Counted from the first letter of the stretch, positions 8,101 to 9,704 are shown. The stretch is DNA of 64,000 bases from Saccostrea cucullata (GCF_032062105.1 NW_026932050.1:186001-250000), one strand, 5' to 3'. The notes: generated by a model from the letters alone, not told the origin. Program-made: numbers and translations.

Positions 8101-9704
8101 ACAGAAACTCACAGAAAGAAAACTTGGACTAGAAAGCTACTCATCACATGATTGGTGGGTTATACTATGTAGACAATCAATGATTGTTGGGCTTAGTATG
8201 TAGACCTTCAATTATTAGTGGGTAATAGTATGTAGACCTTCAATGATTAATGTGTTATAGTATGTAGACCTTCTAATGATTGGTTGGTTAGATGATGTAA
8301 ATCATCAATGATTGGTTGGTTTATAGCATATAGCATGTAGACCTTCAATGATTGGTTGGTTATAGTATGTAGTCTTCAATGATTGGTGAATTTAAAGGAT
8401 TGGTTAGTGAAAGGAATTGATTTTTGTTTCAACTTCCTTTACTAGCTAAAGTTCCATAATAATGTGTTGATGTAGACTATTAAATGTCCATTTGTTTGCG
8501 TGGATAAACATTTTAATTAATGAAATGATCTTTTTTGACAATCATATCGGTACATATCTTTATACGAGTGTTTATTTTCTGTAATAATCTAGGTATCAGG
8601 AACTATCCCCTGGAGAGATGCAGAGATTGTCCTTTGTCAGACTCTTCTTCCATCAACCTAAGTTTGCAGGTCAGTGTATTTTAAATCTTAGCTCACCTGA
8701 ACTTAGTGTCCAATTATATGCCCTTTGCACAAAGTTTATCCTCTCCATTGTTAAGTTTATTGCCTCTTACACTTTTATAGCATTCTACTCTTTTAACTAA
8801 ATCTAGAACAAGGCATTCTCTAGAATATTCTATTTAAGGAAATAAAATCTATGTATATAAACTATATGTTCTGTACTTTAGTATTTTTAGTAACAGGTCA
8901 GGTTCTAACTAAACTCTTCTTTTATGTATAGTTCTGGATGAGGCTGGTTCTAAGTAAACTCTTGTTTTATTTATAGTTCTGGATGAGCTGGTTCTAACTT
9001 AACTCTTGTTTTATTTATAGTTCTGGATGAGGCTGGTTCTAACTAAACTCTTGTTTTATTTATAGTTCTGGATGAGCTGGTTCTAACTAAACTCTTGTTT
9101 AATATATAGTTCTGGATGAGCGGGTTCTAATTAAACTCTTGCTTTATTTATAGTTCTGGATGAGGCTGGTTCTAACTAAACTCTTGCTTTATTTATAGTT
9201 CTGGATGAGCTGGTTCTAAGTAAACTCTTGTTTTATGTATAGTTCTGGATGAGGCTGGTTCTAACTAAACTCTTATTTTATTTATAGTTCTGGATGAGCT
9301 GGTTCTAACTAAGCTCTTGTTTTATTCATAGTTCTGGATGAGGCTGGTTCTAACTAAACTCTTATTTTATTTTTAGTTCTGGATGAGGCTGGTTCTAACT
9401 AAATTCTTGTTTTATTTATAGTGCTGGATGAGGCTGGTTCTAACTAAACTCTTGTTTTATTCATAGTAACAGGTTGTGTTCTAACTACACTCTTGTTTTA
9501 TTTATAGTTCTGGATGAGGCGACAAGTCAGATCAGTATAGACCTTGAGCGGGTGTTGTACACTAAATGCCAGGAGCTGGGCATCACTCTGATGAGTGTAG
9601 GTCACAGGGACACACTTAGACAGTATCATCAGTTAGAGCTCCGCCTACAGGGGCGGGGCAACTGGACAATGCAGCCAATCACAGACAATGTTATATCTGT
9701 ATGA
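5186..9704 (+). CDS. ABCD4: ABC transporter subfamily D member 4, 3' part (nucleotide-binding domain); 5' exons lie upstream of the window
   Basis: Phase-compatible GT-AG exons: 5186-5298, 7114-7224, 7598-7689, 7834-7870, 8052-8154, 8593-8669, 9508-9704. They give Walker [33 protein letters not shown], signature [15 protein letters not shown], Walker B AVLDEATS and H-loop SVGHR, which match ABCD4 as I recall it. AATAAA at ~9742. Confidence 0.93.
5630..6441. mobile_element. Non-autonomous hAT-like DNA element with 6-bp TSD, in an ABCD4 intron
   Basis: TIRs CAGGGTCCGACACTCG and CGAATGTCGAACCCTG (2 mismatches in 16). GAATGA flanks both ends (5624-5629, 6442-6447). The element is absent from the paralogous intron at ~22790-22810. 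Confidence 0.8.
8149..8390 (+). repeat. ~32-bp tandem repeat (about 8 units) beginning at an ABCD4 exon 3' end and 5' splice site
   Basis: Unit ~TGATTGGTTGGTTATAGTATGTAGACCTTCAA. The first unit overlaps the exon end and donor (TGATTG|GTGGGT at 8154/8155). Confidence 0.85.
8890..9520 (+). repeat. 44-45-bp tandem array of the ABCD4 terminal-exon 3' splice site
   Basis: Unit GGTTCTAACTAAACTCTTGTTTTATTTATAG|TTCTGGATGAG(G)CT. AGs end at 8931, 8976, 9020, 9065, 9109, 9153, 9198, 9242, 9287, 9331, 9376 and 9421, with a variant at 9466 and the true acceptor at 9507. Confidence 0.95.

What the first reader, a model, noticed from the sequence alone, without database searches (positions are those of the whole stretch)
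8890..9520. Twelve complete decoy 3' splice sites stacked in front of the ABCD4 Walker-B (terminal) exon
Seen: each 44-45-bp unit carries a branch-point-like TTCTAAC (a few TTCTAAG/TTCTAAT), a T-rich tract, TAG and the first 11-13 nt of the real exon (TTCTGGATGAG[GC]). Twelve such units plus one variant precede the true acceptor at 9507. Splicing to a decoy gives VLDEAGS(K/N)* or a short VLDEL...* tail, truncating the protein just after Walker B and removing the D-loop and H-switch. Inference: because this is the last intron, such transcripts would have no downstream exon junction and could escape EJC-dependent NMD. Either the cell picks the last of 14 near-identical sites (probably via exonic enhancers or terminal-exon definition), or array length tunes the ratio of active to ATPase-dead subunits of a half-transporter that must dimerise.
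Basis: partly seen in the sequence, partly recalled or inferred. Interest (0 to 1): 0.82.

Follow-up and report, generated by a model that had tools for sequence, protein, structure and literature searches.

The report
Splice-acceptor minisatellite in oyster ABCD4
In the hooded oyster, the 45 bases spanning the last intron/exon junction of the ABCD4 transporter gene have been copied about 13 times into the intron, leaving a row of look-alike splice acceptors that the RNA data show are skipped; this kind of repeat (a "mirage" minisatellite) is already known and looks harmless here.

Summary
Window 8901-9520 is a 44/45-bp tandem array of 14 units that copies the last intron/exon junction of the hooded-oyster ABCD4 gene. 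It holds 12 decoys, each with a branch site, pyrimidine tract, AG and 11-13 nt of exon, then one variant unit, then the real acceptor (AG 9506-9507).

- **Splicing:** Contigs from three independent RNA runs all join donor 8669 to the real exon. No decoy junction was seen.
- **Reality of the array:** The unit is unique to this locus. Unit-to-unit words occur in independent RNA and DNA runs, so it is not an assembly artefact. The copy number is unverified.
- **Age:** A related oyster has the same exons with a last intron of about 226 nt and a single acceptor. The array is therefore young and lineage-specific.
- **Class:** It is a junction-anchored ("mirage", F7-type) minisatellite, described in amphioxus and in human genes. 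This scan has already noted the same thing many times elsewhere in this genome, and two more such arrays lie at this locus.
Array length tuning the dose of ATPase-dead subunits has no support. Contigs cannot exclude rare decoy use.
- **Why the decoys are silent (inferred):** Only 13 nt of exon follow each decoy, as in beta-globin constructs where the distal site wins.

The parts
8593..8669 (+). Penultimate ABCD4 exon (ABC signature ...[25 protein letters not shown], plus the first base of the Val codon). Donor GT at 8670-8671.
   Evidence: RNA contigs join 8154|8593 and 8669|9508; sequence and translation.
8670..9507 (+). Last intron, 838 nt, GT..AG. The array fills its 3' three quarters.
   Evidence: Joint 8667->9506, 'skips 838, GT..AG (cut +2)', in an X4 contig of 371 nt. 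In X9 and X19 the loose ends behind 8669 read TTCTGGATGAGGCGAC.
8901..9520 (+). 44/45-bp tandem array of 14 units. Each unit holds a branch-like TTCTAAC, a T-rich tract, TAG and a copy of the first 11-13 nt of the exon.
   Evidence: TRF, score 993; unit table; unique to this locus in the genome.
8888..8931 (+). Flank before the array (TAG TAACAGGTCAGG) plus the first branch site/tract/AG, ending in the first decoy AG (8930-8931). It is a near copy of 9464-9507, so a longer duplication of about 57 nt brackets the 45-bp array.
   Evidence: Pairwise alignment of 8866-8950 with 9441-9527: identical at TAGTAACAGGT and over most of the unit.
8932..9466 (+). Twelve internal units. Each begins with the exon copy TTCTGGATGAG(G)C that follows a decoy AG. 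The last one ends in TTCATAG, followed by TAACAGG instead of exon sequence (the variant unit).
   Evidence: 4.3% per-site variation spread evenly; all 12 decoy AGs intact (P = 0.35 by chance).
9467..9507 (+). Last intronic unit, the one actually used: TAACAGGTTGTG, branch-like TTCTAAC at 9479-9485 (A9484 lies 23 nt before the G of the AG), T-rich tract, AG 9506-9507.
   Evidence: Sequence; RNA junction.
9508..9704 (+). Coding part of the terminal exon: (V)[13 protein letters not shown]...SVGHR... holds Walker B, the D-loop and the H-switch. Stop TGA at 9702-9704. The 3' UTR runs on to at least about 9890.
   Evidence: phmmer against solved structures aligns it to the C-terminal nucleotide-binding domain of ABCD1/3/4; RNA contigs reach 9796-9894.
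8148..8388 (+). Sister array on the donor side of the preceding intron: 32 bp x 7.3, starting 7 nt before the real donor (exon ends 8154, GATTG|GTGGGT). Most decoy donors are weakened (GTTGGT, ATGTGT).
   Evidence: TRF; RNA joint 8153->8592 uses the first site; unit listing; a 31-bp x 8.8 array lies at the same exon end in a related oyster.
23666..24024 (+). Third junction-anchored array at the locus: 65 bp x 5.5 in the degenerate second copy of the ABCD4 3' half. The unit is an acceptor (..TTGACAG) plus the first 41 nt of the Walker-A exon.
   Evidence: TRF; self-comparison 6989-7154 ~ 23564-23730; unit listing; the unit-to-unit joint is present in three RNA runs (table 5c).

Best explanation
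This is a junction-anchored minisatellite of the "mirage" or F7 type. A stretch of about 45 bp, running from just upstream of the branch site to 13 nt into the terminal exon of ABCD4, was duplicated in tandem. Slippage or unequal exchange then amplified it, partly as 89-bp dimers, into the intron. This happened in the Saccostrea lineage after it split from a related oyster that still has a 226-nt intron with one acceptor.

The array lies wholly inside the intron that is actually removed. Splicing joins donor 8669 to the last acceptor, the only one followed by the real exon, and the 12 decoys are passed over. The most likely reason is inferred, not shown here: each decoy is followed by only 13 nt of exon and then by intron-like sequence (the next branch site and pyrimidine tract). 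It therefore lacks the exon context that commits a 3' splice site.

The array is best read as a neutral or slightly costly by-product of tandem duplication, not as a regulator.
For: **Shown**
- Array anatomy.
- Real junction 8669|9508 in contigs of three RNA runs from three studies. An X4 contig of 371 nt spans it. X9 and X19 contigs run from 8669 into TTCTGGATGAGGCGAC, where the decoys would read GGCTGG or GAGCTGG.
- Unit-to-unit words are present in independent samples. The 75-nt contigs in X4 and X9 have identical first and last 30 nt, i.e. a closed k=31 cycle of period 45. An X3 DNA contig joins a canonical unit directly to the real exon.
- The unit occurs nowhere else in the 1.17-Gb genome.
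- Related-oyster contigs L011-L013 carry the orthologous exons, with 233 nt between the last two exon matches and one acceptor.
- More distant bivalves also have one acceptor at the same codon phase.
- The array RNA has no special fold (z = +0.57). There is no Rfam match.
- Variation among decoys is even at 4.3% per site. Intact AGs in all 12 are not significant (P = 0.35).

**From papers**
[quoted passage not shown] They include an acceptor-side case, BflGb6 (PMC3087553, PMC3902484).
- The human F7 IVS7 repeat uses only the authentic site (PMC1557585).
- Beta-globin constructs with a duplicated 3' splice site and 14 nt of exon beside the proximal copy spliced only to the distal site (PMC5389562).
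Against: All RNA evidence comes from assembled contigs, which drop rare variants. Decoy use of a few percent, or use limited to one tissue or stage, cannot be excluded. Array-unit contigs do occur in the RNA runs while the unique parts of the intron do not. This fits collapsed repeat words from pre-mRNA, but it would also fit decoy-spliced transcripts, which would retain the downstream units.

The RNA runs differ from the window by 3-7% in the exons, so they may come from a sister lineage whose array length is unknown. Simple 5'-to-3' scanning, or intron-definition pairing, would favour the first decoy. Why the last site wins is therefore inferred, not shown. Copy number and length polymorphism were not verified.
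Confidence: 0.78

Rival explanations
1. Leaky decoys or a splicing brake. The array is not regulatory but is not silent either. A small share of transcripts splice to decoys and encode ABCD4 cut just after Walker B. Alternatively, several U2AF/U2 complexes sitting on the decoys slow removal of the last intron. Either way the array is mildly costly.
For: All 12 decoys have an intact branch A, pyrimidine tract and AG. Array-unit contigs occur in all three RNA runs while unique intron sequence does not. In vitro, concurrent occupancy of two 3' splice sites inhibits splicing (PMC5389562). In the human IFI6 and CBS junction minisatellites the first two pseudo-sites are used (PMC1557585).
Against: No decoy junction appears in any contig. 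The X4 and X19 contigs pass the discriminating bases without a break. The array contigs are explained by repeat words adding up over about 12 copies of pre-mRNA.
Confidence: 0.15
2. Array length sets the ratio of full-length ABCD4 to ATPase-dead truncated subunits that poison the dimer, and these transcripts escape NMD because the stop lies in the last exon.
For: Only the anatomy: the decoys are complete, and the predicted products end right after Walker B.
Against: The dominant junction in three RNA runs is the real one and no decoy junction was seen. The array is absent from a related oyster and from more distant bivalves. There is no sign of selection on the decoy signals. The same kind of array sits at two other junctions of this locus, one of them in a degenerate gene copy. 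According to unchecked notes of this scan it also occurs at many unrelated genes of this genome, which points to a mutational habit rather than a device of ABCD4.
Confidence: 0.04
3. Assembly artefact. The array, or most of its copies, was created by the assembler.
For: The copy number rests on one assembly, and short-read contigs cannot span 620 nt of repeat.
Against: Unit-to-unit and unit-to-exon words occur in contigs of independent RNA and DNA runs. The units carry ordered variants and a 44/45 dimer pattern, which is typical of real arrays. There is no N run nearby.
Confidence: 0.02

Closest known systems
Amphioxus "mirages" (Adh3, globins BflGb6 and BflGb9, TnC, PGBD5)
   Same: Minisatellite-like tandem duplications whose unit spans an intron/exon boundary. 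BflGb6 copies the 3' end of an intron plus the 5' part of the next exon, as here. The authentic copy lies at the exon end of the array and regular splicing is kept. The boundary units are excluded from homogenisation (PMC3087553, PMC3902484).
   Different: The host is a mollusc, not a cephalochordate. The unit is shorter (45 bp against 150-160 bp in BflGb6) and there are more copies. Length or somatic instability, shown for Adh3, was not tested here.
Human F7 intron 7 37-bp VNTR (also LMNB2 and PDGF junction minisatellites)
   Same: The first or last monomer spans the real junction, identical pseudo-sites follow, only the authentic site next to the exon body is used, and the pseudo-sites are functional but silent (PMC1557585).
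   Different: Those arrays are donor-side, and the proposed mechanism is 5'-to-3' scanning that takes the most upstream donor. Here the array is acceptor-side and the most downstream site is used, so that mechanism cannot be carried over.
Human IFI6 (6-16) and CBS intron 13 junction minisatellites
   Same: Minisatellites that repeat a splice junction (PMC1557585).
   Different: In those genes the two nearest pseudo-sites are used as well as the authentic site. Here no decoy use was seen in contigs.
Beta-globin test constructs with a duplicated 3' splice site (3'D-14/55/205)
   Same: A complete upstream 3' splice site is followed by only 14 nt of exon and then by a second 3' splice site with the full exon. 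Splicing went only to the distal site, and two sets of U2AF/U2 could bind at once, which inhibited splicing (PMC5389562). This is the nearest experimental model of one decoy plus the real site.
   Different: An artificial mammalian substrate with two sites tested in vitro, against 13-14 natural sites in an oyster gene.
Intronic VNTR of human ABCA7 that affects splicing
   Same: A tandem repeat in an intron of an ABC transporter gene whose length is reported to affect splicing (PMC5954066, title and abstract only).
   Different: I did not check whether that repeat is built from a splice junction. No length effect has been shown for the oyster array.

Membership tests
Junction-anchored ("mirage"/F7-type) minisatellite | Head-to-tail array of a 10-160 bp unit, three or more copies | tested here: met
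   45-bp unit x 14, 89% matches.
Junction-anchored ("mirage"/F7-type) minisatellite | The unit spans a real exon/intron boundary, with an exon part, an intron part and the splice signal | tested here: met
   The unit holds 32 nt of intron (branch site, tract, AG) plus 11-13 nt of exon. The boundary 9507|9508 is confirmed by RNA contigs and is conserved in three other bivalves.
Junction-anchored ("mirage"/F7-type) minisatellite | One end unit is the authentic junction and the array extends into the intron | tested here: met
   The array ends at 9520, 13 nt into the terminal exon. All other units lie inside intron 8670-9507.
Junction-anchored ("mirage"/F7-type) minisatellite | Local origin, not a dispersed repeat family | tested here: met
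   A whole-genome search with two to three units finds only this array. The 1.5-kb query finds only itself and the paralogous terminal-exon fragment.
Junction-anchored ("mirage"/F7-type) minisatellite | Regular splicing is kept and the authentic site is used | tested here: met
   Three RNA runs show the real junction and no decoy junction. This holds for the dominant product only, because contigs drop rare forms.
Junction-anchored ("mirage"/F7-type) minisatellite | Length polymorphism or instability between alleles | tested here: inconclusive
   An X3 DNA contig has a canonical unit where the window has the variant unit, so alleles or lineages differ. Copy numbers cannot be read from short contigs.
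   No decoy junction in contigs of three RNA runs. Rare use is not excluded.
   Absent in related-oyster contigs L011-L013 and in L014 and L016. Present only in close relatives 90-99% alike.
ABCD4 (lysosomal cobalamin transporter) orthologue | Membrane-domain and nucleotide-binding exons closest to ABCD4 rather than ABCD1-3 | tested here: met
   Two membrane-domain exons upstream of the window hit only ABCD4 chains (E about 1e-7). The terminal exon alone does not discriminate (ABCD1, 3 and 4).

The most novel reading that the evidence does not exclude
Acceptor-side junction arrays may be self-silencing by geometry. The branch adenosine of unit i+1 lies only 22 nt behind the AG of unit i. Factors assembled on the next unit would then cover each decoy AG and its 13-nt exon stub. 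Only the last AG, with free exon behind it, could complete splicing. Multiple occupancy would also slow removal of this intron, so array length would act as a quantitative brake on ABCD4 output. If so, these natural arrays would give a rule for 3' splice-site choice that simple scanning does not predict.
Probability: 0.12. Interest if true: 0.6.

Novelty: new member of a known kind. Interest (0 to 1): 0.3.

Why it matters
On its own the array is ordinary: one more splice-junction minisatellite in a genome where this scan has already noted many. It has some value as a clean natural test case for 3' splice-site choice, because 12 complete, near-identical acceptors lie upstream of the one that is used. 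That is the opposite of what 5'-to-3' scanning or short-intron pairing would predict.

It also provides a dated pair at one locus. The acceptor array is younger than the split from a related oyster, while the donor array one intron upstream appears to be shared with that oyster. This bears on the open question of why exon edges seed such arrays and how long the arrays last.

Tried and rejected
1. **RNA structure hiding the decoys.** The fold of 8860-9560 is no more stable than shuffles (z = +0.57). Rejected.
2. **Known RNA family.** No Rfam match in 8000-10500.
3. **Dispersed repeat or transposon origin.** The unit is unique to this locus. Rejected.
4. **Second haplotype contig for a direct length comparison.** None found. 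The only other match is a degenerate paralogous fragment that lacks 8166-9553.
5. **Reaching the orthologous locus of Saccostrea echinata through the TRIM-NHL gene nested in the ABCD4 intron.** The family has hundreds of copies about 80% alike. The two loci fetched match only the TRIM reading frame. Abandoned.
6. **Selection on decoy signals.** No signal.
7. **Papers.** The original mirage paper (PMC117041) is not held. A search for the CBS repeat found nothing useful. Both are cited only through PMC3087553 and PMC1557585.
9. The N run at 29257-29392 was left alone.

Full report
**1.

Tandem Repeats Finder reports a 45-bp unit in 14.0 copies at window 8901-9520, with 89% matches and score 993. 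Higher-order periods of 89 and 222 are also reported.

Listing the units gives 12 decoys of the form TAG|T[TG]CTGGATGAG. Their AGs end at 8931, 8976, 9020, 9065, 9109, 9153, 9198, 9242, 9287, 9331, 9376 and 9421. One variant unit follows: its AG ends at 9466 and is followed by TAACAGGTTGTG instead of exon sequence. The real acceptor comes next (AG 9506-9507, exon from 9508).

Each unit holds a copy of the first 11-13 nt of the exon, 3 linker bases, a branch-like TTCTAAC (TTCTAAG twice, TTCTAAT once), a T-rich tract and TAG. Units of 45 nt (GAGGCTGG) and 44 nt (GAGCTGG) mostly alternate, which explains the 89-bp period.

Read in the phase of the donor, the 45-nt type gives VLDEAGS(K/N)*. The 44-nt type gives VLDE(L/R)V... 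tails of 8-14 residues. The real exon gives 65 residues.

**2. The gene and the species**

The window is G000:C14187:186001-250000 of a 1.17-Gb assembly. The species name is therefore an inference from equal contig length.

Two membrane-domain exons just upstream of the window hit only ABCD4 among solved structures (E about 1e-7). The terminal exon aligns to the end of the nucleotide-binding domain of ABCD1, ABCD3 and ABCD4. It carries LDE (Walker B), ATSQIS (D-loop) and SVGHR (H-switch); the motif names are established knowledge of ABC domains.

Exons were searched one by one, by reference.

**3. What the RNA shows**

I laid contigs of three RNA runs from three studies, plus one DNA run, on 7000-9900. 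Spliced contigs define these introns: 7225-7597, 7871-8051, 8155-8592 and 8670-9507.

For the last intron:
- An X4 contig of 371 nt joins 8592-8667 to 9506-9796 ("skips 838, GT..AG, cut +2").
- In X9 and X19, contigs that end at 8669 run on with TTCTGGATGAGGCGAC(GAGT).
- Contigs that start at 9506 are preceded by ...CATCAACCAAAGTTTGC.

The bases GGCGAC mark the real exon. A decoy would read GGCTGG or GAGCTGG. So the dominant product in three independent samples uses the last acceptor, and no decoy junction was listed.

Limits:
- These are assembled contigs, which drop rare forms and cannot give levels.
- Two of the runs are labelled RNA only by a guess, although they do hold spliced contigs.
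- The exons differ from the window by 3-7%, so the samples may be a sister lineage.

**4. The array is real and is local**

X4 and X9 each hold a 75-nt contig lying on the array. With its two listed differences applied, its first 30 nt equal its last 30 nt. That is a closed cycle of 31-letter words with period 45, which needs unit-to-unit joints.

The DNA run X3 (90-95% alike) has a contig that joins a canonical unit (...GGCTGGTTCTAACTAAAC) directly to the tract and real exon at 9496-9581. That organism therefore also has at least one decoy, and it lacks the window's variant unit at that place.

Searching the whole genome with 1.5 kb around the array, or with three units, finds the unit nowhere else. 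An assembly artefact and a dispersed repeat are both unlikely. The copy number itself remains unverified.

I note, without weighing depths, that array-unit contigs occur in the RNA runs while the unique part of the intron does not. Repeat words that add up over a dozen copies of pre-mRNA would explain this. Decoy-spliced transcripts, which would keep the downstream units, would explain it too.

**5. Age**

A word search with the terminal exon found a 76-residue reading frame on Logan contigs of three runs (L011-L013). It is 86% identical to the terminal exon.

L011 is genomic DNA of a related oyster and carries the orthologous exons. Its last intron is about 226 nt and ends ...ggtataacag|TATTAGATGAAGCGACG, with one acceptor and no repeat. 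The distance between the last two exon matches is 233 nt in all three contigs.

Two more distant bivalve contigs (68% and 60% identical) also show a single acceptor at the same codon phase and no array.

The 45-bp array therefore arose within the Saccostrea lineage. The last 57 nt before and into the exon (9464-9520) are a near copy of the flank before the array plus the first unit (8888-8944). At least two duplication events with different end points, both covering the acceptor, built the present structure.

**6. It is one of several at this locus**

- **Donor side, one intron upstream.** The exon before the penultimate one ends at 8154 (GATTG|GTGGGT). A 32-bp x 7.3 array starts 7 nt before that donor (8148-8388). 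RNA uses the first site, the one next to the exon.
- **The same junction in a related oyster.** It has a 31-bp x 8.8 array at the same exon end (L011 474-747). L012 and L013 have one unit fewer. This donor-side array is probably older than the split of the two oysters.
- **The duplicated copy of the locus.** Window 1748-10472 is duplicated at 16416-25476 (77-88% identity). The second, degenerate copy lacks 8166-9553. It carries a 65-bp x 5.5 array (23666-24024) whose unit is an acceptor plus the first 41 nt of the Walker-A exon.

Three of the four distinct arrays of five or more copies in the first 30 kb sit on ABCD4 exon edges. A rough estimate says this is far more than position alone would give; no formal test was run.

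**7. What it is**

Notes of this scan pointed me to the term "mirage", and I checked it in papers.
[quoted passage not shown] It shows normal RT-PCR products, haplotypes with 6 and 3 units, and boundary units that escape homogenisation (PMC3087553).
- Borensztajn et al. review human donor-side cases: F7, LMNB2 and PDGF use only the authentic site, while IFI6 and CBS use two pseudo-sites as well (PMC1557585).

The oyster array meets every defining feature I could test (see the membership table). The scan's notes hold 55 entries with the words "minisatellite" and "splice" for this same genome. Those notes are unchecked, and I did not test their genome-wide figures.

**8. How it most likely works**

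Shown: the whole array is removed as part of the intron.

Inferred: the decoys are passed over because only 13 nt of exon follow each of them before intron-like sequence resumes. The closest experiment is a beta-globin substrate with a duplicated 3' splice site and 14 nt of exon beside the proximal copy. It spliced only to the distal site. Two sets of U2AF/U2 could bind at once, and that inhibited splicing (PMC5389562).

Neither RNA structure (z = +0.57) nor decay of the decoys can explain the silence. Variation among decoys is 4.3% per site, spread evenly, with all AGs and branch adenosines intact. Twelve intact AGs is not significant (P = 0.35).

A more specific idea, untested, is that factors on unit i+1, whose branch A lies 22 nt behind the AG of unit i, cover that AG. 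Only the last AG would then have free exon behind it.

**9. Verdict**

The array is real, and it is a new member of a known kind. It is acceptor-side, lineage-specific and skipped by splicing in the data at hand.

The dose-tuning alternative is not supported. Rare decoy use, or a slowing of splicing, remains possible and needs raw reads or minigenes to settle.

Noticed in passing
window 8148-8388; L011 474-747: A donor-side junction minisatellite (32 bp x 7.3) starts 7 nt before the real donor at 8154|8155. A related oyster has a 31-bp x 8.8 array at the same exon end, and two other samples of it carry one unit fewer. The array is probably shared by descent, so such arrays can outlast a species split.
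   Followed up: partly
window 23666-24024: A 65-bp x 5.5 array whose unit is an acceptor plus the first 41 nt of the Walker-A exon. It sits in the degenerate second copy of the ABCD4 3' half. Its unit-to-unit joint (7154 -> 7101 with TAATCACTTGT between) is present in contigs of all three RNA runs.
   Followed up: partly
window 1748-10472 versus 16416-25476: Tandem segmental duplication (77-88% identity) of the TRIM-NHL gene plus the 3' half of ABCD4. The second copy lacks 8166-9553: it runs from the first unit of the donor array to 46 nt into the terminal exon, so the penultimate exon and the 45-bp array are missing.
   Followed up: partly
window 1939-3636 (- strand): An intact 565-residue B-box/NHL (TRIM-like) reading frame lies on the opposite strand inside an ABCD4 intron. 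The family has thousands of members in the database search, hundreds of them at 75-80% identity in Saccostrea cucullata and S. echinata.
   Followed up: partly
window 26313-28359: A large, degenerate 24/48-bp satellite (TGGATGAGAGAAGCATGATGTGAT) in three blocks with strong G-over-C skew. Its relation to any exon was not examined.
   Followed up: no
window 43690-44728; L010 9305-9888: Two arrays with long units (166 bp x 6.3, and 146 bp x 4 just upstream of the window). They were not checked against exon edges.
   Followed up: no
window 9478-9546 (run X3): One DNA contig of the related organism B 'goes back 69' from 9546 to 9478. This would be a 69-bp tandem duplication covering the last unit and 39 nt of the terminal exon. 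It rests on a single contig at depth 7 and may be a misjoin.
   Followed up: no
window 29257-29392: A run of 136 N, left as it is.
   Followed up: no
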